Assembly: GCF_040938485.1 (NCBI RefSeq)
Contig: NW_027271737.1
Coordinates: 930,001 to 994,000 of the forward strand
DNA: 64,000 nt
Direction: 5' to 3'
Source of the DNA: Diadema antillarum
Lineage: Eukaryota
This document shows, in pieces, positions 23,604 through 63,300 of the stretch (positions are counted from its first letter, which is position 1; every line of letters begins with the position of its first letter). Position numbers and translations under genes: made by a program. The notes beneath the pieces are model-generated. The model was not told the DNA's origin, ran no database searches, and was given only the letters and a program-made list of their open reading frames with translations.

Positions 23604-23634
<31 letters not shown>

Positions 23635-26600
23635 ACCTGTGCATTGTGGTTGCTTATACCCCGTTTACAGTGCGGGGCTGGACCGAGTCGGGCCGGGCGA
23701 GCACGGCCTCAATTATCACGGTACTCGGCCGCGCAATTCTGTTTGATTTACAGTGGAGGGCTCAGCCCGGGCTTTTAATAAAACTTTTAATATTTGTCAT
23801 AGTGGCGCTCTGCTTGTACACAAACGATTATTTGGTACCGCATTATGCCCAGTTTCCTTTTACAGAGAGAAAAGGCCAGACTGCTTCCAGACCTTGGCCA
23901 AATGCGCGGCCATATGTTGAACCGCATTTGGCCATTTTTAAGGGTTTCCAGCGAAAGGAAGGCCAGGCTGAGCCCGATCTTTTCACTCACTGTAAACGGG
24001 GCCTAGGTTAATATGCTGGAGAGGCGTGTTACTTACTGCACATTATCTCATTGATAATTAAACAGAATTCACCACGACCAAGACACGAACAGAAGCAACA
24101 ACCAGACCGGGAACCGAAAGAGCAACAACTGTCATTGAACAAACTACTGCAACTCCTGAATCAACAACTACAACTCAGACAACTGTTACATCAACCACTA
24201 GTGCAAGGCAGGAATCTACAACGCCAGGTACTTTTTTACTTGCGTTTTTCTAGGACTCCTGTCCCCAGATTCGAAACCGGAAGGATTTCATTTATTACTA
24301 GAGGACAGTTGGACAATTTTTCGCGTTAACGTAACCTGATCTTCCTCTACATTCTGCCTAAATGTATTCAGGAAGCAAGTCAGTTTCCTACACTGAACAA
24401 ATGACTGAATACAAATGGTACTATCTCTGAATAAGTTGCACGTGTCATGTTTGCTGAACAAATGTACGCTTCATACTCGTCGTCATCGAGGTTATACCTA
24501 TCTACATTCAACTTTCCAACTTTACCAGGTGCTTGTAGGGAACCACTGGATGGTGTGGATCTTTATACTAATTTGCAAGTTTTACTGGATAACGAACGTG
24601 TTACTGTTCACGCTAATAGCGAATCACCTAAAAAGACAGATTTTGACAATCACAATAGGTGATACGCTGATACCGTATCACCTATAGCGTACACATTCTG
24701 CAACGTGCGTTTCTCACCTTGGATTTCCGATTCATTTTTGTTTCATTAATCAGCAACGGGCATGGAAACAACAGTAGTTACAACCGTTGTAACTACAACA
24801 GTACCTACCACCACGTCGAAACCCACAACAGTCACTGAAGCTACCACCACAGCTGTTACCACAACAACTCCGATGGGTACTACTAGGATGGAGGAGACCA
24901 CAACTCTTTCTACTACTACTACTCCTGCTCAGACTACAGCAATGGGTAAAGCCTTGTTCTTTTTTTTTTCTCTCTCTCTCTGGCAAATGAACTTTCTTTA
25001 TAAATTAATATCGTAAGTTAACACTTCCCTTCTATCCCAATTTAAGGCATGGAATTTAGTTGAGAATAATGTTCTAAATTGACTACTGGTGGCACTTTAA
25101 GACTTAGGAGATTGTCATCGCTACAATACAATACATTGTTATGTATCCCCAAAACAACATTTGCACCAACAATTCTAAAGTGGTAGTAGTGGAGACAACT
25201 GCTACTCAGTCGACCATCACATATACCACTTGAGCAACTGAGCAACCAACAACAGCACCAGGTAATTTCCATTCCATTCTAATATGATTCATGTCCCATT
25301 AAACATCAACGGTAGTGGAACGCTATGGTATGGCCAAAATATTTTACCCAATAACTGAGACGAACGATTGACCATTCTTTTCAGAATGCTACGAGCCACA
25401 AGAGCCATTGCAAGAAGTCACTACCTTGACATACGAAGCCAGTTTCAGTCAGCCTACTACTATCAGAGGAATAAAACTACCTGCCAGCAGCTTCCCTACA
25501 ATGACTACAGTAGTATTCAGGATCAAACGCGCCGAAGGAGATGAATGGATTATTGTTCCTGCACAGAGCACAGAATCAGGATCTGGTGACTTCTCCGGTT
25601 CAGGATCGGGAGAGTCAGAGAATCAGGTAAATCCTAAATAGACAAGTATTCCCTTGTTCTACACAAAACATACATTACCACTTCTTGTATTAATACGTTA
25701 TAAATGAAATGGGCGGTATTTCGCCTGTATCTTCTATTAACCCTTTATGTGCTTTGAGTGTTGATTTCCACGTACAACACTAAAGCATTGTTTACGATAT
25801 CCAACAACAGTGGATGATGATAGAGAAAGGCTTCACAATATCATCTATCTTCAATCTTCAGTGTACCAGTCCTACATGTAAAATTTCTACAGTTCATCTA
25901 CTCTGATTCCTCATACTAATACTTTTTATCTTTCTTAGAAAAGCATAATTATGTGACCCCTTTATTGTAGTCGTATTTCAAACATATTTGATTTTCCAGA
26001 TTGACATTTGCATTTTCTGAAAGTTGTTTGGTCCAGATATCAAATAGAAAAGTTGTACTAATGCACTGATTAATTTCGTTGTATTCTTCATAGGGAGAAG
26101 TGACGTTTTCTTTGAGTGACTCTGCTCCAACTAACCTCTGGCTTCCATCCGAATTGGGGCCTGTGCGAGCTATCGAAGCAAGCTTTGGAGATGCACTTAA
26201 TCTGGGAAATGAAATCGATGTCTACGGCTGTCAGGGTAGGTGCACTTAAACCGACTTATTCACAAACAGCACTCTTGTGTGGAAAAGTTCTTTTCAGTTC
26301 AAACCGAAAAATCTCGTTCACGAATAGAATTCAATCAGTTCTATCTAACGTGTCTGTCGTGATCCCCTTAGATGTTCTTATTACGCAGAAAAGGTATATG
26401 CTAAGATTTATTTCTAATCATTTGATTCTTTCTCCATTTATAGATTATAAGACACATTGTATTCCCTCCGTGCTCTATGAACTGTATAATCAGTGAACTT
26501 ACAGCATTATAAGTTGTTAGCTATTCCAATATCAATTCCCTTAAAACTGAGAGCATTTTCAGTTGTTAGCTATGGCCAGATCAATTTCATTAAAAAGGTT

Positions 26601-29600
26601 CCTATGGATTTATTTTCCCCTTTGTTTGTATATTACCGCAGGACCCACTCTGGCTCCAACCACGAGAGGTACCTCTCCCCCAGGTAATACATTCCATTTT
26701 TATAAAAATATTAGGTTTCCTCGGTTTGGTCAAATACCTTGAAACATTAAATAAGTAAAAAAAAAAAAATATCTCTTTTAAAGCTCAAGACCACAGCGAA
26801 GCGCCAAACGCTGCAATCTCATTTTTTCCTCCCTCAACATCTAAAGCGATGACACTGTTTTTTTTTTTTTAAATACACTTGAAATCATCATTTTAGTCAA
26901 GAAAAGAAGGAAAATTGTCTTTTAAGATATATTTCATACTTCAACTCTGTCTAATACGACTGTATTCGATCCAAAAGTAGAATGTTCTCATTTGTTTCTT
27001 TCTCTCAACATTTACAGAAACGACAACTCTGGGTCAGTCAGGTAGGTCTAAGTCTCCATTGTATTTCTAACCTTTTTGAATTAACATGTAGTAAAAAAAG
27101 AAAATCAGATATCACTAAATGATAATTGCTTTAAGATCAAACTGGTTTCGACTATTCTTCGCTATAAGTCTTCTCTTTAAAAACAAAAGTCTCTCAACTG
27201 TCAAAAACACTGAGTGAAAGATACATGTGTGTCGTTTTCTCCTTTTTTACAGAAGTTACAACAACAAGGACGCGAACGCGAGCGACGACTACTGCTCCAG
27301 GAACCGAGCAAACAACAGCAGTAGTAGAGGAAACTACTGCCACTCCTGAAGCAACAACTACAACTCAGACAACTGTTACATCGACCACAACAGCACGACA
27401 GGAATCTACAACGCCAGGTAACTTCTCACTTCCATTTTTCCAAGACTCGTGTCCGAAGACGTAAAACCTGAATTATGTCATGTAAAACTAGAAGGCGGTC
27501 ACTCAACTCTTTCGTGTTAGCGTAACCTCTTCCTTCATCTTCATTCTGCTTGATGGTATCCAGCAACCAAGTTTGCTTAACTAAACGAATGACTAAAATG
27601 CATATGTTAATATCTCTTTCAATGACTTTAACGTGTTACTGTTCACTTAACAATATTGTACCCTACAAATTCGTCGTCACGCCCGTCTACATCCAAGACA
27701 TTTCTTTTACTTACCAGCTGCTTGCAGAAAACCACTGGATGGCGTGGATCTTGATACTAAATTGGAAGTTTTACTTGACAACAATAAAACCAACCTTTGG
27801 AGCGAACCTACTTCAGAGAGGACAGTGAAGGTCACTGTCAAATCAGTCGATGACACCTCAGACCTGACGATTAAGATATCAGCTGTCAGCATAAGCACAA
27901 CCAATGGTTCACCTCCCGATAGCGTTACAATTGGTGTCCTCTCGTCCAGCGATGGACCTGTTGAACGCGAATTTACAGCTCAACCCGGAGACGATCAGAC
28001 TCAAGGAATGTACGAGCTTCGAAACTTGACTGGTTTGAATGAAGTTTATTTCGAAATCACTCTTCCTGACGACTACAACGTGGCAGATTCGGAATTGACG
28101 GTGACATTCAGAGGATGTATTGAAACAGGTAATTTCATTTCTTTATGCGCTGAAGAAGTCCTCATTCATCTCTTTTGTTCTTGTATATGATCTATACATT
28201 TCTCCCACTAAATTTAACCACTACCTGCTGATATTGCAACAGCATATCAACTTTGGAATTTTGTGTGATCACAAAAAGATGATTGGCAGGTTATTGATTT
28301 GGTAAATTTATGTCTATACATTTTTCACCCATTACTCCTGCACTTTAATTCTTTTTTCTAATTAATCAGTCCTCATCCATCTCTTTTGATCGTGTAATGA
28401 TCCATTCATATATAACCGGTAACTGCTGATATTCCAACAACACATCAACTTCAGAATTTTAAGTAATCACAAAGAAAAAAAAAAGATAATTGGCATGTTA
28501 TTGCTTTGGTAGGTTTATGTCCATATATTTCTTGCTGATTATTCTGGTACTTTATGACAGTGCACTCAACTTATCAGCAACAATTTCACACTACACTACA
28601 CTACGATTCATTATTGTTTCATTAATCAGCAACGGGCATGGAAACAACAGTAGTTACAACCGTTGTAACTACAACTGTACCTACCACCACGTCGAAACCC
28701 ACAACAGTCACTGAAGCTACCACCACAGCTGTTACCACAACAACTCCGATGGGTACTACTAGGATGGAGGAGACCACAACTCTTTCTACTACTACTACTC
28801 CTGCTCAGACTACAGCAATGGGTAAAGCCTTGTTCTTTTCTCTCTCTCCCTCTCTCTCTCTCTCTGGCAAATGAACTTTCTTTATAAATTAATATCGTAA
28901 GTTAACACTTCCCTTCTATCCCAATTTAAGGCATGGAATTTAGTTGAGAATAATGTTCTAAATTGACTACTGGTGGCATTTTAAGACTTGGGAGATTGTC
29001 ATCGCTACAATACAATACATTGTTATGTATTCCAAAACAACATTTGCACCAACAACTAAAGTGGTAGTAGTGGAGACAACTGCTACTCAGTCGACCATCA
29101 CATATACCACTTGAGCAACTGAGCAACCAACAACAGCACCAGGTAATTTCCATTCCATTCTAATACCATTCATGTCCCATTAGTATAATCATCAACGGTA
29201 GTGGAACGCTATGGTATGGCCAAAATATTTTACCCAATAACTGAGACGAACGATTGACCATTCTTTTCAGAATGCTACGAGCCACAAGAGCCATTGCAAG
29301 AAGTCACTGCCTTGACATACGAAGCCAGCTTCAGTCAGCCTACTACTATCAGAGGAATCAAACTACCTGCCAGCAGCTTCCCTACAATGACTACAGTAGT
29401 ATTCAGGATCAAACGCGCCGAAGGAGATGAATGGATTATTGTTCCTGCACAGAGCACAGAATCAGGATCTGGTGACTTCTCCGGTTCAGGATCGGGAGAG
29501 TCAGAGAGTCAGGTAAATCCTAAATAGACAAGTATTCCCTTGTTCTACACAGAACATACATTACCACTTCTTGTATTAATACGTTATAAAAGGAAAATGG

Positions 29601-32600
29601 GCGGTATTTCGCCTGTATCTTCTATTAACCCTTTATGTGCTTTGAGTGTTGATTTGCACGTACAACCCTAAAGCACTGTATCGATATCCAACGACCACGA
29701 ATGATAGAGAAATGCTTAACACTATCCTTTATCTTCAGTGTACCAGTCCTAGCTGTCAAATCTCTACTTATCATCTTCTCTGATTCATCGTACTAAAACT
29801 TGTTATCTTTCTTGGAAAAACATTATTATGTCACCCCTTTATTGCAGTCGTATTTCAAACATATTTGATTTTCCGGATTTGCATTTGCATTTTCTGAACA
29901 TTGTTTGGTCCAGACATCAAATTGGAAAGTTGTACTAATGCATTGATTAATTTCTTTGTATTCTTCATAGGGCGAAGTGACGTTTTCTTTGAGTGACTCT
30001 GCTCCAACGAACCTCTGGCTTCCATCCGAATTGGGGCCTGTGCGAGCTATCGAAGCAACCTTTGGAGAAGCACTTAATCTGGGAAATGAAATCGAGGTCT
30101 ACGGCTGTCAGGGTAGGTGCACTTTAAGCGACTTATTCAAAAACAACACTCTTATGTGGACAAGTTCTTGTGAGTTCAAACGGAAAATTCTCGTTCACGA
30201 TTAAAATTCAAACAGTTCTATCTAACGTGTCTCTCGTAATCCTTAAAAGTTCTAGTTACGCAGAAAAGGAATATACTATGATTTATTTCTAATCATTTGA
30301 TTCTTTATCCATGTATAGATTATAAGACACATTGCATTCACTCCGTGCGCTATGAGCGGTATAATAAGTGAACTTACAGCATTTTAAGTTGTTAGTTATG
30401 GCCAGATCAATTTCATTAAAAAGTTTCCTATGGATTTATTTTCCCCTTTGTTTGTATATTACCGCAGAACCCACTCCGGCTCCAACCACGAGAGGTACCT
30501 CTCCCCCAGGTAATACATTGTATTTTTATAGAAATATTAGGTTTTCTCGGTTTGGTCAAATACCATGAAACATTGAATAAGTAAAAAAAATAATAATATT
30601 TCTTTTAAAGCTCAATACCACAGCGAAGCGCCAAACGCTGCAATCTCATTTTTTTTCCTCAACATCTAAAGCGATGACACTGTTTTTTTTTTTTCAAAAT
30701 ACACTTGAAATCATCATCTAAGTCAAGGAAAGAAGGAAAATTGTCTTTGAAGATATAATTATTTCATATTTCACCACTGTCTAATACGACTGTATTCGAT
30801 CCAGAAGGAGAATGTTCTCATTTGTTTCTTTCTCTCAACATTTACAGAAACGACAACTCTGGGTCAGTCAGGTAGGTCTACGTCTCCATTGTATTTCTAA
30901 CCTTTTTGAATTAACATGTACCAAAAAAAGAAAATCAGATATCACTAAATGATAATTGCTTTAAGATCAAACTGGTTTCGACTATTCTTCGCCATAAGTC
31001 TTCTCTTTAAAAACAAAAGTCTCCCAACTGTCAAAAACACTGAGTGAAAGATACATGTGTGTCGTTTTCTCCTTTTTCACAGAAGTGACAACAAGGACGC
31101 GAACGCGAGCGACAACGACTACTGCTCCAGGAACCGAGCAAACAACAGCAGTAGTAGAGGAAACTACTGCCACTCCTGAAGCAACAACTACAACTCAGAC
31201 AACTGTTACATCGACCACAACAGCACGACAGGAATCTACAACGCCAGGTAACTTCTCACTTCCATTTTTCCAAGACTCGTGTCCGAAGACGTAAAACCTG
31301 AATTATGTCATGTAAAACTAGAAGGCGGTCACTCAACTCTTTCGTGTTAGCGTAACCTCTTCCTTCATCTTCATTCTGCTTGATGGTATCCAGCAACCAA
31401 GTTTGCTTAACTAAACGAATGACTAAAATGCATATGTTAATATCTCTTTCAATGACTTTAACGTGTTACTGTTCACTTAACAATATTGTACCCTACAAAT
31501 TCGTCGTCACGCCCGTCTACATCCAAGACATTTCTTTTATTTACCAGCTGCTTGCAGAAAACCACTGGATGGCGTGGATCTTGATACTAAATTGGAAGTT
31601 TTACTTGACAACAATAAAACCAACCTTTGGAGCGAACCTACTTCAGAGAGGACAGTGAAGGTCACTGTCAAATCAGTCGATGACACCTCAGACCTGACGA
31701 TTAAGATATCAGCTGTCAGCATAAGCACAACCAATGGTTCACCTCCCGATAGCGTTACAATTGGTGTCCTCTCGTCCAGCGATGGACCTGTTGAACGCGA
31801 ATTTACAGCTCAACCCGGAGACGATCAGACTCAAGGAATGTACGAGCTTCGAAACTTGACTGGTTTGAATGAAGTTTATTTCGAAATCACTCTTCCTGAC
31901 GACTACAACGTGGCAGATTCGGAATTGACGGTGACATTCAGAGGATGTATTGAAACAGGTAATTTCATTTCTTTATGCGCTGAAGAAGTCCTCATTCATC
32001 TCTTTTGTTCTTGTATATGATCTATACATTTCTCCCACTAAATTTAACCACTACCTGCTGATATTGCAACAGCATATCAACTTTGGAATTTTGTGTGATC
32101 ACAAAAAGATGATTGGCAGGTTATTGATTTGGTAAATTTATGTCTATACATTTTTCACCCATTACTCCTGCACTTTAATTCTTTTTTCTAATTAATCAGT
32201 CCTCATCCATCTCTTTTGATCGTGTAATGATCCATTCATATATAACCGGTAACTGCTGATATTCCAACAACACATCAACTTCAGAATTTTAAGTCATCAC
32301 AAAGAAAAAAAAAGATAATTGGCATGTTATTGCTTTGGTAGGTTTATGTCCATATATTTCTTGCTGATTATTCTGGTACTTTATAACAGTGCACTCAACT
32401 TATCAGCAACAATTTCACACTACACTACACTACGATTCATTATTGTTTCATTAATCAGCAACGGGCATGGAAACAACAGTAGTTACAACCGTTGTAACTA
32501 CAACTGTACCTACCACCACGTCGAAACCCACAACAGTCACTGAAGCTACCACCACAGCTGTTACCACAACAACTCCGATGGGTACTACTAGGATGGAGGA

Positions 32601-32663
32601 GACCACAACTCTTTCTACTACTACTACTCCTGCTCAGACTACAGCAATGGGTAAAGCCTTGTT

Positions 32664-32698
<35 letters not shown>

Positions 32699-35600
32699 CA
32701 AATGAACTTTCTTTATAAATTAATATCGTAAGTTAACACTTCCCTTCTATCCCAATTTAAGGCATGGAATTTAGTTGAGAATAATGTTCTAAATTGACTA
32801 CTGGTGGCATTTTAAGACTTAGGAGATTGTCATCGCTACAATACAATACATTGTTATGTATTCCAAAACAACATTTGCACCAACAACTAAAGTGGTAGTA
32901 GTGGAGACAACTGCTACTCAGACGACCATCACATATACCACTTGAGCAACTGAGCAACCAACAACAGCACCAGGTAATTTCCATTCCATTCTAATACGAT
33001 TCATGTCCCATTAGTATAAACATCAACGGTAGTGGAACGCTATGGTATGGCCAAAATATTTTACCAAATAACTGAGACGAACGATTGACCATTCTTTTCA
33101 GAATGCTACGAGCCACAAGAGCCATTGCAAGAAGTCACTGCCTTGACATACGAAGCCAGCTTCAGTCAGCCTACTACTATCAGAGGAATCAAACTACCTG
33201 CCAGCAGCTTCCCTACAATGACTACAGTAGTATTCAGGATCAAACGCGCCGAAGGAGATGAATGGATTATTGTTCCTGCACAGAGCACAGAATCAGGATC
33301 TGGTGACTTCTCCGGTTCAGGATCGGGAGAGTCAGAGAGTCAGGTAAATCCTAAATAGACAAGTATTCCCTTGTTCTACACAGAACATACATTACCACTT
33401 CTTGTATTAATACGTTATAAAAGGAAAATGGGCGGTATTTCGCCTGTATCTTCTATTAACCCTTTATGTGCTTTGAGTGTTGATTTGCACGTACAACCCT
33501 CAAGCACTGTATCGATATCCAACGACCATGAATGATAGAGAAATGCTTAACAATATCCTTTATCTTCAGTGTACCAGTCCTAGCTGTCAAATCTCTACTT
33601 ATCATCTTCTCTGATTCATCGTACTAAAACTTGTTATCTTTCTTGGAAAAACATTATTATGTCACCCCTTTATTGCAGTCGTATTTCAAACATATTTGAT
33701 TTTCCGAATTTGCATTTGCATTTTCTGAACATTGTTTGGTCCAGACATCAAATTGGAAAGTTGTACTAATGCATTGATTAATTTCTTTGTATTCTTCATA
33801 GGGCGAAGTGACGTTTTCTTTGAGTGACTCTGCTCCAACGAACCTCTGGCTTCCATCCGAATTGGGGCCTGTGCGAGCTATCGAAGCAACCTTTGGAGAA
33901 GCACTTAATCTAGGAAATGAAATCGAGGTCTACGGCTGTCAGGGTAGGTGCACTTTAAGCGACTTATTCAAAAACAACACTCTTATGTGGACAAGTTCTT
34001 GTGAGTTCAAACGGAAAATTCTCGTTCACGATTAAAATTCAAACAGTTCTATCTAACGTGTCTCTCGTAATCCTTAAAAGTTCTAGTTACGCAGAAAAGG
34101 AATATACTATGATTTATTTCTAATCATTTGATTCTTTATCCATGTATAGATTATAAGACACATTGCATTCACTCCGTGCGCTATGAGCGGTATAATAAGT
34201 GAACTTACAGCATTTTAAGTTGTTAGTTATGGCCAGATCAATTTCATTAAAAAGGTTCCTATGGATTTATTTTCCCCTTTGTTTGTATATTACCGCAGGA
34301 CCCACTCCGGCTCCAACCACGAGAGGTACCTCTCCCCCAGGTAATACATTGTATTTTTATAGAAATATTAGGTTTTCTCGGTTTGGTCAAATACCATGAA
34401 ACATTGAATAAGTAAAAAAAATAATAATATTTCTTTTAAAGCTCAATACCACAGCGAAGCGCCAAACGCTGCAATCTCATTTTTTTTCCTCAACATCTAA
34501 AGCGATGACACTGTTTTTTTTTTTCAAAATACACTTGAAATCATCATCTAAGTCAAGGAAAGAAGGAAAATTGTCTTTGAAGATATAATTATTTCATATT
34601 TCACCACTGTCTAATACGACTGTATTCGATCCAGAAGGAGAATGTTCTCATTTGTTTCTTTCTCTCAACATTTACAGAAACGACAACTCTGGGTCAGTCA
34701 GGTAGGTCTACGTCTCCATTGTATTTCTAACCTTTTTGAATTAACATGTACCAAAAAAAGAAAATCAGATATCACTAAATGATAATTGCTTTAAGATCAA
34801 ACTGGTTTCGACTATTCTTCGCCATAAGTCTTCTCTTTAAAAACAAAAGTCTCCCAACTGTCAAAAACACTGAGTGAAAGATACATGTGTGTCGTTTTCT
34901 CCTTTTTCACAGAAGTGACAACAAGGACGCGAACGCGAGCGACAACGACTACTGCTCCAGGAACCGAGCAAACAACAGCAGTAGTAGAGGAAACTACTGC
35001 CACTCCTGAAGCAACAACTACAACTCAGACAACTGTTACATCGACCACAACAGCACGACAGGAATCTACAACGCCAGGTAACTTCTCACTTCCATTTTTC
35101 CAAGACTCGTGTCCGAAGACGTAAAACCTGAATTATGTCATGTAAAACTAGAAGGCGGTCACTCAACTCTTTCGTGTTAGCGTAACCTCTTCCTTCATCT
35201 TCATTCTGCTTGATGGTATCCAGCAACCAAGTTTGCTTAACTAAACGAATGACTAAAATGCATATGTTAATATCTCTTTCAATGACTTTAACGTGTTACT
35301 GTTCACTTAACAATATTGTACCCTACAAATTCGTCGTCACGCCCGTCTACATCCAAGACATTTCTTTTATTTACCAGCTGCTTGCAGAAAACCACTGGAT
35401 GGCGTGGATCTTGATACTAAATTGGAAGTTTTACTTGACAACAATAAAACCAACCTTTGGAGCGAACCTACTTCAGAGAGGACAGTGAAGGTCACTGTCA
35501 AATCAGTCGATGACACCTCAGACCTGACGATTAAGATATCAGCTGTCAGCATAAGCACAACCAATGGTTCACCTCCCGATAGCGTTACAATTGGTGTCCT

Positions 35601-36493: not shown

Positions 36494-36528
<35 letters not shown>

Positions 36529-40321: not shown

Positions 40322-40356
<35 letters not shown>

Positions 40357-49300: not shown

Positions 49301-52300
49301 TTTCATTTCTTTATGCGCTGAAGAAGTCCTCATTCATCTCTTTTGTTCTTGTATATGATCTATACATTTCTCCCACTAAATTTAACCACTACCTGCTGAT
49401 ATTGCAACAGCATATCAACTTTGGAATTTTGTGTGATCACAAAAAGATGATTGGCAGGTTATTGATTTGGTAAATTTATGTTTATACATTTTTCACCCAT
49501 TACTCCTGCACTTTAATTCTTTTTTCTAATTAATCAGTCCTCATCCATCTCTTTTGATCGTGTAATGATCCATTCATATATAACCGGTAACTGCTGATAT
49601 TCCAACAACACATCAACTTCAGAATTTTAAGTAATCACAAAGAAAAAAAAAGATAATTGGCATGTTATTGCTTTGGTAGGTTTATGTCCATATATTTCTT
49701 GCTGATTATTCTGGTACTTTATAACAGTGCACTCAACTTATCAGCAACAATTTCACACTACACTACACTACGATTCATTTTTGTTTCATTAATCAGCAAC
49801 GGGCATGGAAACAACAGTAGTTACAACCGTTGTAACTACAACTGTACCTACCACCACGTCGAAACCCACAACAGTCACTGAAGCTACAACCACAGCTGTT
49901 ACCACAACAACTCCAATGGGTACTACTAAAACGGAGGAGACCACAAGTGTTACTACTGCTACCCCTGCTAAGACCACAACAATGGGTAAAGCCTTGTTGT
50001 TTATTTTTTCTCTTTGGTTCAATGGGCTTTCTTTAGAAATTCATCGTGTAAAGTCACCCTAACCACCCTATCCCATTCCTAGTCATGCCAGTGTATTAAT
50101 GAGAAAACCTTATTTTTTTTATCATCATCAAAAGAGACTGTTTTTCAATTACATCTGGAATTTCCGAACATCAAGATATGTAAAACAATAAATCATCATC
50201 TAAGTCATGGAAAGCGCTATATACGTAATTTGTCTTTCAAGACCATAGATTATTTGATATTTCAGCTCTGTCTAATACGAATATAATTGATCCATAACGA
50301 CAATGTTCTCATGTTATTGTTTTTTTATCTCAACATTTACAGAAACGACAACTCTGGGTCAGTCAGGTAGGTCTAAGTCTCCATTATTATAATTGCAATT
50401 TTTGAATTAACAATTACACACACACAAATGAGTTATCACGAAAAAATTATTGCTTTAGTATCAAACTGGTTTCGACTCTTCTTCGCTCTAACTCTTCTCT
50501 TAAATAAAAAAAAACAACTTTCTCTCAACTCTCATAATCACTTAGTGATAGATACATGCGTATCGTGTTTTTTTTTTTTTTTTTTTTTTTACAGAAGTCA
50601 CAACAAGGTCGCGAACGCGAGCGACAACTACTACTGCTCCAGGAACCGAGCAAACAACAGCTGTGGTAGAGGAAACTACTGCAACTCCTGAAGCAACAAC
50701 TACAACTCAGACAACTGTTACATCGACCACAACAGTAGGACAGGAATCTACAACGCCAGGTAACTTATCACTTTCATTTTTGCAGAACTCGTGTTCGAAG
50801 ACTTAAAACCTGAATTATGTCATGTAAAACTAGAAGGCGGTCACTCAACTCTTTCATGTTAGCATAACCTCTTCCTTCATCTACATTCTGCTTTATGGTA
50901 TCCAGCAACCCAGTTTGCTTAACTAAACGAATGACTAAAATGCATATGTTAATATCTCTCTCAATGACTTTAACGTGTTACTGTTCACTTAACAATATTG
51001 TACCCTACAAATTCGTCGTCACGCCCATCTACATCCAAGACATTTCTTTTATTTACCAGCTGCTTGCAGAAAACCACTGGATGGCGTGGATCTTGATACT
51101 AAATTGGAAGTTTTACTTGACAACAATAAAACCAACCTTTGGAGCGAACCTACTTCAGAGAGGACAGTGAAGGTCACTGTCAAATCAGTCGATGACACCT
51201 CAGACCTGACGATTAAGATATCAGCTGTCAGCATAAGCACAACCAATGGTTCACCTCCCGATAGCGTTACAATTGGTGTCCTCTCGTCCAGCGATGGACC
51301 TGTTGAACGCGAATTTACAGCTCAACCCGGAGACGATCAGACTCAAGGAATGTACGAGCTTCGAAACTTGACTGGTTTGAATGAAGTTTATTTCGAAATC
51401 ACTCTTCCTGACGACTACAACGTGGCAGATTCGGAATTGACGGTGACATTCAGAGGATGTATTGAAACAGGTAATTTCATTTCTTTATGCGCTGAAGAAG
51501 TCCTCATTCATCTCTTTTGTTCTTGTATATGATCTATACATTTCTCCCACTAAATTTAACCACTACCTGCTGATATTGCAACAGCATATCAACTTTGGAA
51601 TTTTGTGTGATCACAAAAAGATGATTGGCAGGTTATTGATTTGGTAAATTTATGTCTATACATTTTTCACCCATTACTCCTGCACTTTAATTCTTTTTTC
51701 TAATTAATCAGTCCTCATCCATCTCTTTTGATCGTGTAATGATCCATTCATATATAACCGGTAACTGCTGATATTCCAACAACACATCAACTTCAGAATT
51801 TTAAGTAATCACAAAGAAAAAAAAAGATAATTGGCATGTTATTGCTTTGGTAGGTTTATGTCCATATATTTCTTGCTGATTATTCTGGTACTTTATAACA
51901 GTGCACTCAACTTATCAGCAACAATTTCACACTACACTACACTACGATTCATTTTTGTTTCATTAATCAGCAACGGGCATGGAAACAACAGTAGTTACAA
52001 CCGTTGTAACTACAACTGTACCTACCACCACGTCGAAACCCACAACAGTCACTGAAGCTACAACCACAGCTGTTACCACAACAACTCCAATGGGTACTAC
52101 TAAAACGGAGGAGACCACAAGTGTTACTACTGCTACCCCTGCTAAGACCACAACAATGGGTAAAGCCTTGTTGTTTATTTTTTCTCTTTGGTTCAATGGG
52201 CTTTCTTTAGAAATTCATCGTGTAAAGTCACCCTAACCACCCTATCCCATTCCTAGTCATGCCAGTGTATTAATGAGAAAACCTTATTTTTTTTTATCAT

Positions 52301-55300
52301 CATCAAAAGAGACTGTTTTTCAATTACATCTGGAATTTCCGAACATCAAGATATGTAAAACAATAAATCATCATCTAAGTCATGGAAAGCGCTATATACG
52401 TAATTTGTCTTTCAAGACCATAGATTATTTGATATTTCAGCTCTGTCTAATACGAATATAATTGATCCATAACGACAATGTTCTCATGTTATTGTTTTTT
52501 TATCTCAACATTTACAGAAACGACAACTCTGGGTCAGTCAGGTAGGTCTAAGTCTCCATTATTATAATTGCAATTTTTGAATTAACAATTACACACACAC
52601 AAATGAGTTATCACGAAAAAATTATTGCTTTAGTATCAAACTGGTTTCGACTCTTCTTCGCTCTAACTCTTCTCTTAAATAAAAAAAAACAACTTTCTCT
52701 CAACTCTCATAATCACTTAGTGATAGATACATGCGTATCGTGTTTTTTTTTTTTTTTTTTTTTTTACAGAAGTCACAACAAGGTCGCGAACGCGAGCGAC
52801 AACTACTACTGCTCCAGGAACCGAGCAAACAACAGCTGTGGTAGAGGAAACTACTGCAACTCCTGAAGCAACAACTACAACTCAGACAACTGTTACATCG
52901 ACCACAACAGTAGGACAGGAATCTACAACGCCAGGTAACTTATCACTTTCATTTTTGCAGAACTCGTGTTCGAAGACTTAAAACCTGAATTATGTCATGT
53001 AAAACTAGAAGGCGGTCACTCAACTCTTTCATGTTAGCATAACCTCTTCCTTCATCTACATTCTGCTTTATGGTATCCAGCAACCCAGTTTGCTTAACTA
53101 AACGAATGACTAAAATGCATATGTTAATATCTCTCTCAATGACTTTAACGTGTTACTGTTCACTTAACAATATTGTACCCTACAAATTCGTCGTCACGCC
53201 CATCTACATCCAAGACATTTCTTTTATTTACCAGCTGCTTGCAGAAAACCACTGGATGGCGTGGATCTTGATACTAAATTGGAAGTTTTACTTGACAACA
53301 ATAAAACCAACCTTTGGAGCGAACCTACTTCAGAGAGGACAGTGAAGGTCACTGTCAAATCAGTCGATGACACCTCAGACCTGACGATTAAGATATCAGC
53401 TGTCAGCATAAGCACAACCAATGGTTCACCTCCCGATAGCGTTACAATTGGTGTCCTCTCGTCCAGCGATGGACCTGTTGAACGCGAATTTACAGCTCAA
53501 CCCGGAGACGATCAGACTCAAGGAATGTACGAGCTTCGAAACTTGACTGGTTTGAATGAAGTTTATTTCGAAATCACTCTTCCTGACGACTACAACGTGG
53601 CAGATTCGGAATTGACGGTGACATTCAGAGGATGTATTGAAACAGGTAATTTCATTTCTTTATGCGCTGAAGAAGTCCTCATTCATCTCTTTTGTTCTTG
53701 TATATGATCTATACATTTCTCCCACTAAATTTAACCACTACCTGCTGATATTGCAACAGCATATCAACTTTGGAATTTTGTGTGATCACAAAAAGATGAT
53801 TGGCAGGTTATTGATTTGGTAAATTTATGTTTATACATTTTTCACCCATTACTCCTGCACTTTAATTCTTTTTTCTAATTAATCAGTCCTCATCCATCTC
53901 TTTTGATCGTGTAATGATCCATTCATATATAACCGGTAACTGCTGATATTCCAACAACACATCAACTTCAGAATTTTAAGTAATCACAAAGAAAAAAAAA
54001 GATAATTGGCATGTTATTGCTTTGGTAGGTTTATGTCCATATATTTCTTGCTGATTATTCTGGTACTTTATAACAGTGCACTCAACTTATCAGCAACAAT
54101 TTCACACTACACTACACTACGATTCATTTTTGTTTCATTAATCAGCAACGGGCATGGAAACAACAGTAGTTACAACCGTTGTAACTACAACTGTACCTAC
54201 CACCACGTCGAAACCCACAACAGTCACTGAAGCTACAACCACAGCTGTTACCACAACAACTCCAATGGGTACTACTAAAACGGAGGAGACCACAAGTGTT
54301 ACTACTGCTACCCCTGCTAAGACCACAACAATGGGTAAAGCCTTGTTGTTTATTTTTTCTCTTTGGTTCAATGGGCTTTCTTTAGAAATTCATCGTGTAA
54401 AGTCACCCTAACCACCCTATCCCATTCCTAGTCATGCCAGTGTATTAATGAGAAAACCTTATTTTTTTTATCATCATCAAAAGAGACTGTTTTTCAATTA
54501 CATCTGGAATTTCCGAACATCAAGATATGTAAAACAATAAATCATCATCTAAGTCATGGAAAGCGCTATATACGTAATTTGTCTTTCAAGACCATAGATT
54601 ATTTGATATTTCAGCTCTGTCTAATACGAATATAATTGATCCATAACGACAATGTTCTCATGTTATTGTTTTTTTATCTCAACATTTACAGAAACGACAA
54701 CTCTGGGTCAGTCAGGTAGGTCTAAGTCTCCATTATTATAATTGCAATTTTTGAATTAACAATTACACACACACAAATGAGTTATCACGAAAAAATTATT
54801 GCTTTAGTATCAAACTGGTTTCGACTCTTCTTCGCTCTAACTCTTCTCTTAAATAAAAAAAAACAACTTTCTCTCAACTCTCATAATCACTTAGTGATAG
54901 ATACATGCGTATCGTGTTTTTTTTTTTTTTTTTTTTTTTACAGAAGTCACAACAAGGTCGCGAACGCGAGCGACAACTACTACTGCTCCAGGAACCGAGC
55001 AAACAACAGCTGTGGTAGAGGAAACTACTGCAACTCCTGAAGCAACAACTACAACTCAGACAACTGTTACATCGACCACAACAGTAGGACAGGAATCTAC
55101 AACGCCAGGTAACTTATCACTTTCATTTTTGCAGAACTCGTGTTCGAAGACTTAAAACCTGAATTATGTCATGTAAAACTAGAAGGCGGTCACTCAACTC
55201 TTTCATGTTAGCATAACCTCTTCCTTCATCTACATTCTGCTTTATGGTATCCAGCAACCCAGTTTGCTTAACTAAACGAATGACTAAAATGCATATGTTA

Positions 55301-56524
55301 ATATCTCTCTCAATGACTTTAACGTGTTACTGTTCACTTAACAATATTGTACCCTACAAATTCGTCGTCACGCCCATCTACATCCAAGACATTTCTTTTA
55401 TTTACCAGCTGCTTGCAGAAAACCACTGGATGGCGTGGATCTTGATACTAAATTGGAAGTTTTACTTGACAACAATAAAACCAACCTTTGGAGCGAACCT
55501 ACTTCAGAGAGGACAGTGAAGGTCACTGTCAAATCAGTCGATGACACCTCAGACCTGACGATTAAGATATCAGCTGTCAGCATAAGCACAACCAATGGTT
55601 CACCTCCCGATAGCGTTACAATTGGTGTCCTCTCGTCCAGCGATGGACCTGTTGAACGCGAATTTACAGCTCAACCCGGAGACGATCAGACTCAAGGAAT
55701 GTACGAGCTTCGAAACTTGACTGGTTTGAATGAAGTTTATTTCGAAATCACTCTTCCTGACGACTACAACGTGGCAGATTCGGAATTGACGGTGACATTC
55801 AGAGGATGTATTGAAACAGGTAATTTCATTTCTTTATGCGCTGAAGAAGTCCTCATTCATCTCTTTTGTTCTTGTATATGATCTATACATTTCTCCCACT
55901 AAATTTAACCACTACCTGCTGATATTGCAACAGCATATCAACTTTGGAATTTTGTGTGATCACAAAAAGATGATTGGCAGGTTATTGATTTGGTAAATTT
56001 ATGTCTATACATTTTTCACCCATTACTCCTGCACTTTAATTCTTTTTTCTAATTAATCAGTCCTCATCCATCTCTTTTGATCGTGTAATGATCCATTCAT
56101 ATATAACCGGTAACTGCTGATATTCCAACAACACATCAACTTCAGAATTTTAAGTAATCACAAAGAAAAAAAAAGATAATTGGCATGTTATTGCTTTGGT
56201 AGGTTTATGTCCATATATTTCTTGCTGATTATTCTGGTACTTTATAACAGTGCACTCAACTTATCAGCAACAATTTCACACTACACTACACTACGATTCA
56301 TTATTGTTTCATTAATCAGCAACGGGCATGGAAACAACAGTAGTTACAACCGTTGTAACTACAACTGTACCTACCACCACGTCGAAACCCACAACAGTCA
56401 CTGAAGCTACCACCACAGCTGTTACCACAACAACTCCGATGGGTACTACTAGGATGGAGGAGACCACAACTCTTTCTACTACTACTACTCCTGCTCAGAC
56501 TACAGCAACGGGTAAAGCCTTGTT

Positions 56525-56555
<31 letters not shown>

Positions 56556-59500
56556 GGCAAATGAACTTTCTTTATAAATTAATATCGTAAGTTAACACTT
56601 CCCTTCTATCCCAATTTAAGGCATGGAATTTAGTTGAGAATAATGTTCTAAATTGACTACTGGTGGCATTTTAAGACTTAGGAGATTGTCATCGCTACAA
56701 TACAATACATTGTTATGTATTCCAAAACAACATTTGCACCAACAACTAAAGTGGTAGTAGTGGAGACAACTGCTACTCAGTCGACCATCACATATACCAC
56801 TTGAGCAACTGAGCAACCAACAACAGCACCAGGTAATTTCCATTCCATTCTAATACGATTCATGTCCCATTAGTATAAACATCAACGGTAGTGGAACGCT
56901 ATGGTATGGCCAAAATATTTTACCAAATAACTGAGACGAACGATTGACCATTCTTTTCAGAATGCTACGAGCCACAAGAGCCATTGCAAGAAGTCACTGC
57001 CTTGACATACGAAGCCAGCTTCAGTCAGCCTACTACTATCAGAGGAATCAAACTACCTGCCAGCAGCTTCCCTACAATGACTACAGTAGTATTCAGGATC
57101 AGGCGCGCCGAAGGAGATGAATGGATTATCGTTCCTGCACAGAGCACAGAATCAGGATCTGGTGACTTCTCCGGTTCAGGATCGGGAGAGTCAGAGAGTC
57201 AGGTAAATCCTAAATAGACAAGTATTCCCTTGTTCTACACAGAACATACATTACCACTTCTTGTATTAATACGTTATAAAAGGAAAATGGGCGGTATTTC
57301 GCCTGTATCTTCTATTAACCCTTTATGTGCTTTGAGTGTTGATTTGCACGTACAACCCTAAAGCACTGTATCGATATCCAACGACCATAAATGATAGAGA
57401 AATGCTTAACAATATCCTTTATCTTCAGTGTACCAGTCCTAGCTGTCAAATCTCTACTTATCATCTTCTCTGATTCCTCGTACTAAAACTTGTTATCTTT
57501 CTTGGAAAAACATTATTATGTCACCCCTTTATTGCAGTCGTATTTCAAACATATTTGATTTTCCGGATTTGCATTTGCATTTTTGAACATTGTTTGGTCC
57601 AGACATCAAATAGGAAAGTTGTACTAATGCATTGATTAATTTCTTTGTATTCTTCATAGGGCGAAGTGACGTTTTCTTTGAGTGACTCTGCTCCAACGAA
57701 CCTCTGGCTTCCATCCGAATTGGGGCCTGTGCGAGCTATCGAAGCAACCTTTGGAGAAGCACTTAATCTAGGAAATGAAATCGAGGTCTACGGCTGTCAG
57801 GGTAGGTGCACTTTAAGCGACTTATTCAAAAACAACACTCTTATGTGGACAAGTTCTTGTGAGTTCAAACGGAAAATTCTCGTTCACGATTAAAATTCAA
57901 ACAGTTCTATCTAACGTGTCTCTCGTAATCCTTAAAAGTTCTAGTTACGCAGAAAAGGAATATACTATGATTTATTTCTAATCATTTGATTCTTTATCCA
58001 TGTATAGATTATAAGACACATTGCATTCACTCCGTGCGCTATGAGCGGTATAATCAGTGAACTTACAGCATTTTAAGTTGTTAGTTATGGCCAGATCAAT
58101 TTCATTAAAAAGGTTCCTATGGATTTATTTTCCCCTTTGTTTGTATATTACCGCAGGACCCACTCCGGCTCCAACCACGAGAGGTACCTCTCCCCCAGGT
58201 AATACATTACATTTTTATAGAAATATTAGGTTTTCTCGGTTTGGTCAAATACCATGAAACATTGAATAAGTATAAAAAATAATAATATTTCTTTTAAAGC
58301 TCAATACCACAGCGAAGCGCCAACGCTGCAATCTCATTTTTTTCCTCAACATCTAAAGCGATGTCACTGTTTTTTTTTTCAAAATACACTTGAAATCATC
58401 ATCTAAGTCAAGGAAAGAAGGAAAATTGTCTTTGAAGATATAATTATTTCATATTTCACCTCCGTCTAATACGACTGTATTCGATCCAGAAGGAGAATGT
58501 TCTCATTTGTTTCTTTCTCTCAACATTTACAGAAACGACAACTCTGGGTCAGTCAGGTAGGTCTACGTCTTCATTGTATTTCTAACCTTTTTGAATTAAC
58601 ATGTACCAAAAAAAGAAAATCAGATATCACTAAATGATAATTGCTTTAAGATCAAACTGGTTTCGACTATTCTTCGCCATAAGTCTTCTCTTTAAAAACA
58701 AATGTATCTCAACTGTCAAAAACACTGAGTGAAAGATACATGTGTGTCGTTTTCTCCTTTTTCACAGAAGTGACAACAAGGACGCGAACGCGAGCGACAA
58801 CGACTACTGCTCCAGGAACCGAGCAAACAACAGCAGTAGTAGAGGAAACTACTGCCACTCCTGAAGCAACAACTACAACTCAGACAACTGTTACATCGAC
58901 CACAACAGCACGACAGGAATCTACAACGCCAGGTAACTTCTCACTTCCATTTTTCCAAGACTCGTGTCCGAAGACGTAAAACCTGAATTATGTCATGTAA
59001 AACTAGAAGGCGGTCACTCAACTCTTTCGTGTTAGCGTAACCTCTTCCTTCATCTTCATTCTGCTTGATGGTATCCAGCAACCAAGTTTGCTTAACTAAA
59101 CGAATGACTAAAATGCATACGTTAATATCTCTTTCAATGACTTTAACGTGTTACTGTTCACTTAACAATATTGTACCCTACAAATTCGTCGTCACGCCCG
59201 TCTACATCCAAGACATTTCTTTTATTTACCAGCTGCTTGCAGAAAACCACTGGATGGCGTGGATCTCGATACTAAATTGGAAGTTTTACTTGACAACAAT
59301 AAAACCAACCTTTGGAGCGAACCTACTTCAGAGAGGACAGTGAAGGTCACTGTCAAATCAGTCGATGACACCTCAGACCTGACGATTAAGATATCAGCTG
59401 TCAGCATAAGCACAACCAATGGTTCACCTCCCGATAGCGTTACAATTGGTGTCCTCTCGTCCAGCGATGGACCTGTTGAACGCGAATTTACAGCTCAACC

Positions 59501-60348: not shown

Positions 60349-60379
<31 letters not shown>

Positions 60380-63300
60380 GGCAAATGAACTTTCTTTATA
60401 AATTAATATCGTAAGTTAACACTTCCCTTCTATCCCAATTTAAGGCATGGAATTTAGTTGAGAATAATGTTCTAAATTGACTACTGGTGGCATTTTAAGA
60501 CTTAGGAGATTGTCATCGCTACAATACAATACATTGTTATGTATTCCAAAACAACATTTGCACCAACAACTAAAGTGGTAGTAGTGGAGACAACTGCTAC
60601 TCAGTCGACCATCACATATACCACTTGAGCAACTGAGCAACCAACAACAGCACCAGGTAATTTCCATTCCATTCTAATACGATTCATGTCCCATTAGTAT
60701 AAACATCAACGGTAGTGGAACGCTATGGTATGGCCAAAATATTTTACCAAATAACTGAGACGAACGATTGACCATTCTTTTCAGAATGCTACGAGCCACA
60801 AGAGCCATTGCAAGAAGTCACTGCCTTGACATACGAAGCCAGCTTCAGTCAGCCTACTACTATCAGAGGAATCAAACTACCTGCCAGCAGCTTCCCTACA
60901 ATGACTACAGTAGTATTCAGGATCAAACGCGCCGAAGGAGATGAATGGATTATTGTTCCTGCACAGAGCACAGAATCAGGATCTGGTGACTTCTCCGGTT
61001 CAGGATCGGGAGAGTCAGAGAGTCAGGTAAATCCTAAATAGACAAGTATTCCCTTGTTCTACACAGAACATACATTACCACTTCTTGTATTAATACGTTA
61101 TAAAAGGAAAATGGGCGGTATTTCGCCTGTATCTTCTATTAACCCTTTATGTGCTTTGAGTGTTGATTTGCACGTACAACCCTAAAGCACTGTATCGATA
61201 TCCAACGACCATAAATGATAGAGAAATGCTTAACAATATCCTTTATCTTCAGTGTACCAGTCCTAGCTGTCAAATCTCTACTTATCATCTTCTCTGATTC
61301 ATAGTACTAAAACTTGTTATCTTTCTTGGAAAAACATTATTATGTCACCCCTTTATTGCAGTCGTATTTCAAACATATTTGATTTTCCGGATTTGCATTT
61401 GCATTTTCTGAACATTGTTTGGTCCAGACATCAAATTGGAAAGTTGTACTAATGCATTGATTAATTTCTTTGTATTCTTCATAGGGCGAAGTGACGTTTT
61501 CTTTGAGTGACTCTGCTCCAACGAACCTCTGGCTTCCATCCGAATTGGGGCCTGTGCGAGCTATCGAAGCAATCTTTGGAGAAGCACTTAATCTAGGAAA
61601 TGAAATCGAGGTCTACGGCTGTCAGGGTAGGTGCACTTTAAGCGACTTATTCAAAAACAACACTCTTATGTGGACAAGTTCTTGTGAGTTCAAACGGAAA
61701 ATTCTCGTTCACGATTAAAATTCAAACAGTTCTATCTAACGTGTCTCTCGTAATCCTTAAAAGTTCTAGTTACGCAGAAAAGGAATATACTATGATTTAT
61801 TTCTAATCATTTGATTCTTTATCCATGTATAGATTATAAGACACATTGCATTCACTCCGTGCGCTATGAGCGGTATAATAAGTGAACTTACAGCATTTTA
61901 AGTTGTTAGTTATGGCCAGATCAATTTCATTAAAAAGGTTCCTATGGATTTATTTTCCCCTTTGTTTGTATATTACCGCAGGACCCACTCCGGCTCCAAC
62001 CACGAGAGGTACCTCTCCCCCAGGTAATACATTGTATTTTTATAGAAATATTAGGTTTTCTCGGTTTGGTCAAATACCATGAAACATTGAATAAGTAAAA
62101 AAAATAATAATATTTCTTTTAAAGCTCAATACCACAGCGAAGCGCCAAACGCTGCAATCTCATTTTTTTCCTCAACATCTAAAGCGATGACACTGTTTTT
62201 TTTTTTTCAAAATACACTTGAAATCATCATCTAAGTCAAGGAAAGAAGGAAAATTGTCTTTGAAGATATAATTATTTCATATTTCACCTCTGTCTAATAC
62301 GACTGTATTCGATCCAGAAGGAGAATGTTCTCATTTGTTTCTTTCTCTCAACATTTACAGAAACGACAACTCTGGGTCAGTCAGGTAGGTCTACCTCTCC
62401 ATTGTATTTCTAACCTTTTTCAATTAACATGTACCAAAAAAAGAAAATCAGATATCACTAAATGATAATTGCTTTAAGATCAAACTGGTTTCAACTATTC
62501 TTCGCCATAAGTCTTCTCTTTAAAAACAAATGTCTCTCAACTGTCAAAAACACTGAGTGAAAGATACATGTGTGTCGTTTTCTCCTTTTTCACAGAAGTG
62601 ACAACAAGGACGCGAACGCGAGCGACAACGACTACTGCTCCAGGAACCGAGCAAACAACAGCAGTAGTAGAGGAAACTACTGCCACTCCTGAAGCAACAA
62701 CTACAACTCAGACATCTGTTACATCGACCACAACAGCACGACAGGAATCTACAACGCCAGGTAACTTCTCACTTCCATTTTTCCAAGACTCGTGTCCGAA
62801 GACGTAAAACCTGAATTATGTCATGTAAAACTAGAAGGCGGTCACTCAACTCTTTCGTGTTAGCGTAACCTCTTCCTTCATCTTCATTCTGCTTGATGGT
62901 ATCCAGCAACCAAGTTTGCCTAACTAAACGAATGACTAAAATGCATATGTTAATATCTCTTTCAATGACTTTAACGTGTTACTGTTCACTTAACAATATT
63001 GTACCCTACAAATTCGTCGTCACGCCCGTCTACATCCAAGACATTTCTTTTATTTACCAGCTGCTTGCAGAAAACCACTGGATGGCGTGGATCTTGATAC
63101 TAAATTGGAAGTTTTACTTGACAACAATAAAACCAACCTTTGGAGCGAACCTACTTCAGAGAGGACAGTGAAGGTCACTGTCAAATCAGTCGATGACACC
63201 TCAGACCTGACGATTAAGATATCAGCTGTCAGCATAAGCACAACCAATGGTTCACCTCCCGATAGCGTTACAATTGGTGTCCTCTCGTCCAGCGATGGAC

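What the first reader, a model, noticed from the sequence alone, without database searches (positions are those of the whole stretch)
25181..60656. Stop-codon cassette exon repeated in every long unit: possible length switch or poison exon
Seen: eight copies (25181, 29062, 32893, 36723, 40551, 44241, 56752, 60576) of an 81-nt phase 1-1 segment reading VVVETTATQ(S/T)TITYTT*ATEQPTTAP. TGA is at the same offset in all, including the diverged edge unit. Its start resembles the true exons at 10181/14758 (VTxVETT). The donor is intact (gtaatt in 7, gtatcc in 1), but the acceptor is weak (aactaaag, no pyrimidine tract). Short units have deleted it. Hypotheses: (a) a dead exon that is always skipped and copied passively; (b) regulated inclusion giving a ladder of truncated isoforms or NMD, acting once per unit; (c) the GAG formed by TGA-G acts as an acceptor, giving an in-frame 27-nt exon ATEQPTTAP; (d) readthrough or Sec, unlikely because UGA-G is not a leaky context. 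I saw no canonical AATAAA in the D-E intron.
Basis: partly seen in the sequence, partly recalled or inferred. Interest (0 to 1): 0.85.

Follow-up and report, generated by a model that had tools for sequence, protein, structure and literature searches.

The report
Dead stop-codon exon in mucin repeat
Each long repeat unit of a giant sea-urchin mucin-like gene carries a decayed 81-base exon with a stop codon that assembled transcripts skip, so it looks like an ordinary dead exon copied along with the repeat rather than a switch.

Summary
Eight copies of an 81-nt, phase 1-1 segment with TGA at the same offset sit once in each ~3.83-kb long unit of a tandem array. The host is a mucin-like gene of a sea urchin related to Diadema, built from TIL, a true F5/8-C domain, discoidin-like domains and Thr-rich exons.

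The segment is best read as a dead relic exon.
1. In RNA-like runs of the same organism, one assembled contig joins the upstream Thr-rich exon K directly to exon E and runs on through F, G, H and I. D appears only at intron-level depth, in unspliced contigs. No D-E or 27-nt joint was found.
2. The D acceptor is the weakest in the unit.
3. D is no better conserved than its flanking introns.
4. A marine-metagenome contig about 91% identical has TCA (Ser) at the stop position, and Ser aligns there in an older paralogous exon. So TGA is derived. That contig has lost the in-frame AG acceptor instead, a second, independent lesion.
5. Short units share their K-H intron with two Diadema species. The D-E-F-G block was therefore probably inserted, not deleted from short units.

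Rare NMD-coupled inclusion cannot be excluded, because only contigs, not raw reads, were available. Interest is low.

The parts
25181..25261 (+). D copy 1 (edge unit), 81 nt, TGA at 25231-25233; acceptor caattctaaag
29062..29142 (+). D copy 2, TGA at 29112-29114
32893..32973 (+). D copy 3 (Thr variant), TGA at 32943-32945. This is the copy on which RNA contigs were laid; it is skipped in the spliced contig
36723..36803 (+). D copy 4 (Thr variant)
40551..40631 (+). D copy 5; the E exon that follows it has an in-frame 123-nt deletion
44241..44321 (+). D copy 6; donor gtatcc after a 7-nt deletion in the intron
56752..56832 (+). D copy 7
60576..60656 (+). D copy 8
32459..32650 (+). Its donor ATGG|gtaaag is spliced to exon E in RNA
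33102..33343 (+). Exon E: first half of a Cys..Cys discoidin-like domain; strong acceptor ttcttttcag. It is joined directly to K in X2 record 4
29971..30112 (+). Exon F: second half of the E+F domain, phase 0-1
30468..30509 (+). Exon G: 42-nt Pro/Thr exon, phase 1-1
30848..30871 (+). Exon H: 24-nt exon, phase 1-1; first exon of the short units
31083..31247 (+). Exon I: Thr-rich, 165 nt, phase 1-1
31548..31958 (+). Exon J: single-exon Cys..Cys discoidin-like domain, 411 nt
48018..56751 (+). Four short units (H-I-J-K only, ~2.17 kb each) that lack D-E-F-G

Best explanation
D is the decayed remnant of a Thr-rich (PTS) linker exon. It came into the array as part of a D-E-F-G block that sits in the K-H intron of some units. 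It has a derived nonsense mutation, TCA(Ser) to TGA. Its 3' splice site is poor: no pyrimidine tract and A at -3. The spliceosome therefore pairs the K donor with the strong E acceptor across a ~450-nt intron, and D stays intronic. All eight copies share the same TGA because the whole 3.83-kb unit, introns included, was recently amplified or homogenised by unequal crossing-over or gene conversion. The stop was not maintained copy by copy. Shown here: the copies, the K-E junction, the weak acceptor, the lack of special conservation, and a Ser codon plus a different lesion in a related copy. Inferred: the order of events and that D is selectively neutral.
For: 1. X2 record 4 (668 nt, no mismatches) is K 32456-32649, then directly E 33101-33341, then F, G, H, I, with GT..AG joints. 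In the bin containing D the depth is 0 / 0.71 / 3.16 (X2 / X3 / X4). K has 25 / 3.5 / 15.6 and E has 7.5 / 3.0 / 16.9. D is covered only by colinear, unspliced contigs (X4 record 18, X3 record 12). No D-to-E joint and no joint into 32947 is listed.
2; the D acceptor has 9/17 pyrimidines, a longest pyrimidine run of 4, and A at -3. The exons confirmed by RNA have 11-15/17 pyrimidines and C or T at -3.
3. D is closed in all three frames, while E to K are open in every long unit.
4; the edge unit has 0/81 differences in D, but the flanking introns are nearly as invariant there. About 1.7 changes would be expected, so P(0) is about 0.2.
5; metagenome contig L003, about 91% identical, has TCA at the stop position. 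Its two other differences in D are synonymous. Its AG acceptor is shifted by one base (ctaAGg), giving an 82-nt out-of-frame segment.
6; in the paralogous exon at 10181, Ser (TCC) aligns with the stop.
7; two Diadema loci hold only short units and share the short-unit K-H intron.
Against: The RNA evidence comes from assembled contigs, which drop rare isoforms, and transcripts that include D would be removed by NMD. Low-level or tissue-specific inclusion is therefore not excluded. The tissue and stage of the runs are unknown and their kind is marked '?'; they behave as RNA. The K-E joint is visible in the pieces table but not in the joints table, probably because of the masked TC repeat next to K. 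It is unknown whether L003 is an orthologue from another species or a diverged unit of the same species. Its AG shift rests on one metagenome contig. The two synonymous and zero missense differences in D fit past coding constraint, so the exon may have died recently.
Confidence: 0.8

Rival explanations
1. Per-unit poison exon: D is included at a low or regulated rate. Each inclusion introduces a premature stop that sends the mRNA to NMD or yields a ladder of truncated proteins, tuning the output of the giant gene.
For: AG and GT are present in all eight copies. The segment is phase 1-1 and 81 nt, like the real cassettes. NMD would hide included forms from contig assemblies (limits stated).
Against: No K-D or D-E joint appears in three RNA-like runs, and D depth equals intron depth. 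The acceptor is the weakest in the unit. D is not conserved above its introns. The related copy has a sense codon and no in-frame AG, unlike known poison exons, which are conserved together with their flanks.
Confidence: 0.07
2. 27-nt micro-exon: the AG formed by TGA-G serves as an acceptor, giving an in-frame exon ATEQPTTAP.
For: The arithmetic is right: 27 nt, phase 1-1, and the donor is intact.
Against: No joint ends at 32947 in any run. The spliced contig goes from K straight to E. That AG has G at -3 and no pyrimidine tract.
Confidence: 0.02
3. The TGA is decoded, by selenocysteine insertion or readthrough, and D is a normal coding exon.
For: Apart from the single TGA the frame is open.
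Against: D is not in the spliced transcript. Rfam finds no SECIS or any other family in the window, although the 3' UTR lies outside it. The related copy and the paralogous exon have Ser, not Cys or Sec, at this position.
Confidence: 0.01
4. Assembly artefact: polishing of a near-identical repeat spread one unit's TGA to all units, and some real units carry a sense codon and use D.
For: Units are 99% identical. A copy with TCA exists in a metagenome. RNA shows further unit types that are not in the window.
Against: An independent run's contig carries TGA (X3 record 12). The units keep private variants nearby, such as S/T in D and the donor deletion at 44241, which argues against blanket homogenisation. 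No D-E spliced contig exists in any case.
Confidence: 0.05

Closest known systems
Pseudo-exons and decayed ('dead') exons inside introns of multi-exon genes (general knowledge, not tested against a database)
   Same: An exon-like segment with AG and GT, homologous to real exons of the same gene. It carries a disabling lesion and is left out of the mature mRNA.
   Different: Here the relic is multiplied eightfold because it sits inside a tandemly amplified 3.8-kb unit. A related copy shows a different lesion: the acceptor is lost instead of a stop being gained.
NMD-coupled poison exons, for example the ultraconserved cassettes of SR-protein genes (own knowledge)
   Same: A cassette with an in-frame stop between two constitutive exons.
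   Different: Known poison exons are detectably included, regulated, and conserved together with their flanking introns. None of these three was found here.
Tandem exon-cassette arrays in giant extracellular or structural genes, such as mucin PTS/CysD arrays, the titin PEVK region, nebulin repeats and LPA kringle IV-2 (own knowledge)
   Same: Symmetric phase 1-1 cassettes, copy-number-variable multi-exon units, and concerted evolution that keeps introns as alike as exons.
   Different: The repeated module here pairs lineage-restricted discoidin-like domains with Thr-rich linkers. The J domain has only two 50%-identity clusters among 1.84 billion representatives.
Echinoderm mucus and adhesive glycoproteins with discoidin (F5/8-C), TIL/VWD-type and Thr-rich regions (papers listed, not read in depth)
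   Same: The domain vocabulary of the host gene: TIL-like, a true F5/8-C domain and PTS exons.
   Different: Membership was not tested. No named orthologue was found; the Diadema relatives are annotated 'uncharacterized protein'.

Membership tests
Decayed relic exon (pseudo-exon) | Homology to bona fide exons of the same gene | tested here: met
   D starts VVVVETTAT... like the exons at 10181 (VTTVETTTVT...) and 14758 (VTVVETTTAV...). It has the same phase 1-1 and Thr-rich make-up.
Decayed relic exon (pseudo-exon) | A disabling lesion | tested here: met
   TGA at codon 17 in all eight copies, and stops in all three frames. The stop aligns with Ser in L003 and in the exon at 10181.
Decayed relic exon (pseudo-exon) | Absent from mature mRNA | tested here: met
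   X2 record 4 joins K directly to E. D has only intron-level depth in three RNA-like runs. This is contig-level evidence only.
Decayed relic exon (pseudo-exon) | Evolves like the surrounding intron | tested here: met
   D has 0/81 differences in the edge unit against about 2% change events in the flanks (P about 0.2). Identity to L003 is 96% in D and 91-100% in the flanks. A related copy has lost the in-frame AG.
NMD-coupled poison exon | Usable splice sites on both sides | tested here: inconclusive
   AG and GT are present in all copies. The acceptor has no pyrimidine tract and A at -3.
NMD-coupled poison exon | Detectable inclusion (K-D and D-E junctions) | tested here: not met
   No such joints in X2, X3 or X4. 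Contigs can miss rare forms.
NMD-coupled poison exon | Conservation of the exon and its flanks above the neutral level | tested here: not met
NMD-coupled poison exon | Included form rises when NMD is blocked | not testable with these tools
   This needs an experiment.
Selenoprotein UGA recoding | A SECIS element in the transcript | tested here: inconclusive
   Rfam finds nothing in the 64-kb window, but the 3' UTR is not in the window.
Selenoprotein UGA recoding | The UGA lies in the mature mRNA; homologues have Cys or Sec at that site | tested here: not met
   D is skipped. Homologous positions hold Ser.
Discoidin (F5/8 type C) / galactose-binding-like fold, for repeat domain J | Beta-sandwich matching discoidin or CBM32 structures; terminal Cys pair | tested here: inconclusive
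   AF2 model with pLDDT 78.5 and pTM 0.71. Foldseek hits include CASPR2 discoidin, factor V C2, neuropilin-2 b1 (TMq 0.56) and CBM32, at E 3e-3 to 1e-2. There is no Pfam hit for J. A true F5_F8_type_C domain lies at 5058-5390.

The most novel reading that the evidence does not exclude
The eight stop-bearing cassettes are latent poison exons. Rare or condition-dependent inclusion at any one of the eight sites would send the giant mRNA to NMD or produce a ladder of truncated mucin-like proteins, so repeat copy number itself would set the chance of shut-off.
Probability: 0.05. Interest if true: 0.6.

Novelty: new member of a known kind. Interest (0 to 1): 0.2.

Why it matters
Practically, gene predictors and readers should not place this segment in the coding sequence, and should not read the eightfold repeat of the stop as eightfold evidence of function. 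As a case study it shows exon death inside a fast-evolving tandem array. One nonsense mutation is carried to every long unit by unit amplification. A related copy was disabled differently, by loss of its acceptor. The array also mixes an old short unit with a younger long unit. Nothing here calls for a new mechanism.

Tried and rejected
1. Pfam scans of exons E, F and J gave nothing useful.

2. The search for relatives of exon E, limited to 44-140 aa, gave a single hit, P0003. That hit led to the informative contig L003.

3. Searches with P0001 and with J added only Diadema and TARA contigs that hold short units or J alone, and no further D copy.

4. L001 (D. antillarum) and L004 (D. setosum) have no D, E, F or G by blastn or tblastn within about 24 kb each. 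Whether long units exist elsewhere in those genomes could not be checked.

5. A 30-nt loose end next to 32916 in run X4 matches nothing in the window or in the loci. By depth arithmetic it probably belongs to the depth-2.24 contig that runs colinearly over the D donor. I read it as an unspliced variant unit, not as inclusion of D.

6. Searches of earlier findings by sequence and by words returned nothing.

7. The literature search for repeated stop-bearing pseudo-exons in mucin arrays found nothing specific.

8. A spliced K-E-F query was not sent to any search tool, because it has no reference and would have had to be typed.

9. The first sequencing-run run failed as busy and was repeated unchanged.

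10. The N run at 13122-13256 was left untouched.
Full report
**1. What is in the sequence**

The window holds the 5' part of a very large gene on the + strand. Its first exons are Cys-rich, with a TIL-like match at 1-150 (E 1.3e-4, below Pfam's cut-off). A genuine F5/8 type C (discoidin) domain lies at 5058-5390 (E 1.6e-8). Next come three diverged single-exon Cys..Cys domains, near 8948-9373, 10973-11380 and 13636-14061. They are separated by Thr-rich (PTS) exons, including those at about 10181 and 14758 and a 297-codon one at 11804-12694.

From about 24.1 kb to the end of the window the sequence is a tandem array. There are eight long units of about 3.83 kb; the core units are 99.1-99.7% identical, introns included. 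Four short units of about 2.17 kb lie at 48018-56751.

**2. Exon model of a long unit**

I read the exons from the sequence. Exons E to K were then confirmed by spliced contigs.

| Exon | Coordinates | Length and phase | Content |
|---|---|---|---|
| D | 29062-29142 | 81 nt, phase 1-1 | Thr-rich, contains the TGA |
| E | 29271-29512 | 242 nt, phase 1-0 | first half of a Cys..Cys domain |
| F | 29971-30112 | 142 nt, phase 0-1 | second half of that domain |
| G | 30468-30509 | 42 nt | Pro/Thr |
| H | 30848-30871 | 24 nt | short linker |
| I | 31083-31247 | 165 nt | PTS |
| J | 31548-31958 | 411 nt | second Cys..Cys domain |

Short units hold only H-I-J-K.

**3. The observation**

All eight D copies are at the stated coordinates. 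Each has TGA at offset +50..52 and one S/T polymorphism. Seven have a gtaatt donor and one has gtatcc. The acceptor is (c)aactaaag, or caattctaaag in the edge unit. All three frames of D are closed, whereas E to K are open in every unit. A contig from an independent run (X3 record 12, 32933-33223) differs from the window only at 33066, so the TGA is real. The eight copies are one event copied eight times, not eight independent observations.

**4. Transcript evidence**

Both read tools could be used once. Runs X2-X4 (organism A, 22-41 Mb of contigs) behave as RNA, because their contigs carry GT..AG joints at every predicted intron.

- X2 record 4 (668 nt, no mismatch) is K (32456-32649) followed directly by E (33101-33341), then F (33800-33942), G, H and I. 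D is skipped.
- X4 record 16 joins J to K.
- In the bin that contains D, depth is 0 / 0.71 / 3.16 in X2 / X3 / X4. K has 25 / 3.5 / 15.6 and E has 7.5 / 3.0 / 16.9. The D value equals that of the neighbouring intron bins.
- D is covered only by colinear, unspliced contigs (X4 record 18; X3 record 12).
- No D-to-E joint and no joint into the proposed 27-nt acceptor is listed.
- A loose end at 32916 in X4 most likely belongs to a depth-2.2 contig that runs colinearly over the D donor. I take it for an unspliced variant unit.

The limits are these. Contigs show what is present, not what is absent. NMD would deplete forms that include D. The tissues of the runs are unknown. The K-E joint appears in the pieces table but not in the joints table, probably because of the masked TC repeat beside K.

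**5. Splice signals**

The D acceptor has 9 of 17 pyrimidines at -20..-4, a longest pyrimidine run of 4, and A at -3. The seven exons confirmed by RNA have 11-15 of 17 and C or T at -3. The E acceptor is ttcttttcag. The K donor and the E acceptor define an ordinary intron of about 450 nt with D inside it.

**6. Conservation**

The diverged edge unit has 0/81 differences in D. The 150-200 nt on either side are almost as invariant, with about 2% change events. About 1.7 changes would be expected in D, so P(0) is about 0.2. Nothing marks D as constrained beyond its introns.

**7. Related sequences**

The J domain is extremely lineage-restricted. It has two clusters among 1.84 billion representatives.

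- P0001 comes from Diadema antillarum, assembly GCA_040938485.1. The species was identified through PMC13511894.
- P0004 comes from D. setosum.
- Both loci (L001, L004) are about 79% identical to the window and hold only short units. They have no D, E, F or G within about 24 kb.
- The short-unit K-H intron of the window aligns with the Diadema introns at 82-85%. The alignment includes about 56 nt that the long units lack.

The short unit is therefore old, and the D-E-F-G block is more likely an insertion than something 'deleted from short units'.

A marine-metagenome contig, L003 (TARA scaffold_41803), is about 91% identical and carries I, K, D and E but no J. In its D the stop position reads TCA (Ser). 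The two other differences are synonymous (GTA>GTG, GAG>GAA). Its acceptor reads ctaAGg, so the only AG gives an 82-nt, out-of-frame segment with a stop. In the paralogous exon at 10181, Ser (TCC) aligns with the stop (TTSETE-PTT against TT*ATEQPTT).

So TGA is derived from a Ser codon, and two related copies of D are disabled in two different ways. I cannot tell whether L003 is an orthologue in another species or a diverged unit of the same species. RNA of organism A also shows a K type (..PAQSTAM) that is not in the window, so further unit types exist beyond it.

**8. Mechanism**

D is a relic linker exon that the spliceosome ignores because of its poor 3' splice site. Its nonsense codon has no consequence, and it was multiplied passively with the unit. 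The steps shown are the copies, the skipping, the weak acceptor, the lack of extra conservation and the derived state of the stop. The steps inferred are neutrality, the order of events (splicing loss versus stop), and the block insertion.

**9. Rivals**

- A regulated poison exon remains possible at a low level, about 7%.
- The 27-nt micro-exon and Sec/readthrough have no support. Rfam finds no SECIS in the window, although the 3' UTR lies outside it.
- Homogenisation by the assembler is unlikely, because the units keep private variants and an independent contig confirms the TGA.

**10. Host-gene context**

An AlphaFold model of J, built from a 7-sequence alignment, has pLDDT 78.5 and pTM 0.71. 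It is a beta-sandwich whose Foldseek matches include discoidin domains (CASPR2, factor V C2, neuropilin-2 b1 with TMq 0.56) and CBM32 modules, at E about 3e-3 to 1e-2. This is consistent with a diverged discoidin-like domain but does not prove it.

**11. Verdict**

This is a real feature with an ordinary explanation: a dead exon carried along by repeat amplification. It is a new instance of a known kind, and interest is low at about 0.2. The earlier scan notes s1-208784 and s1-208901 cover the same stretch and agree on the discoidin-like domains and the long/short units.

Noticed in passing
window 40857 (unit starting 40551): The E exon of this unit has an in-frame 123-nt (41-codon) deletion that removes the core of the E+F domain (..GIKLP|SGESESQ). 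It is either a degenerate unit or a repeat-assembly slip.
   Followed up: partly
window 24107-24660: The leftmost, partial unit keeps only the first third of exon J (about 74% identical) and runs into a stop (..CREPLDGVDLYTNLQVLLDNERVTVHANSESPKKTDFDNHNR*). This is a second likely dead exon at the array edge.
   Followed up: partly
window 49950-50260 and L001, L004, L002: The short-unit K-H intron is shared with Diadema antillarum and D. setosum at 82-85% and with a TARA contig at 96.5%. The shared part includes sequence absent from long units, so the short unit looks ancestral and the long unit derived.
   Followed up: yes
L003:1-420: In the metagenome relative the unit goes from exon I straight to exon K. 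The whole J domain exon is missing, so this is another unit variant.
   Followed up: partly
window 32624 / 34677 (RNA joints): RNA contigs of organism A join a K variant ending ..PAQSTAM (Diadema-like, not present in the window) to exon H. The expressed array therefore holds further unit types outside this window.
   Followed up: no
window 31550-31957: The J domain has only two 50%-identity clusters among 1.84 billion representative proteins. Both come from diadematid urchins or marine metagenomes, so this is a very young or very fast-evolving domain family.
   Followed up: partly
window 5058-5390 and 6037-6246: A canonical F5/8 type C (discoidin) domain split over two exons lies upstream of the diverged domains. 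TIL-like and other Cys-rich exons lie at 1-200, 968-1066 and 3079-3306.
   Followed up: partly
window 12127-12225: A 24-nt tandem repeat (4 copies, 8 codons each) lies inside the 297-codon PTS exon. A (C)30 run lies at 23605-23634. TC microsatellites follow every K exon, at the point where long and short units diverge.
   Followed up: no
   Followed up: no
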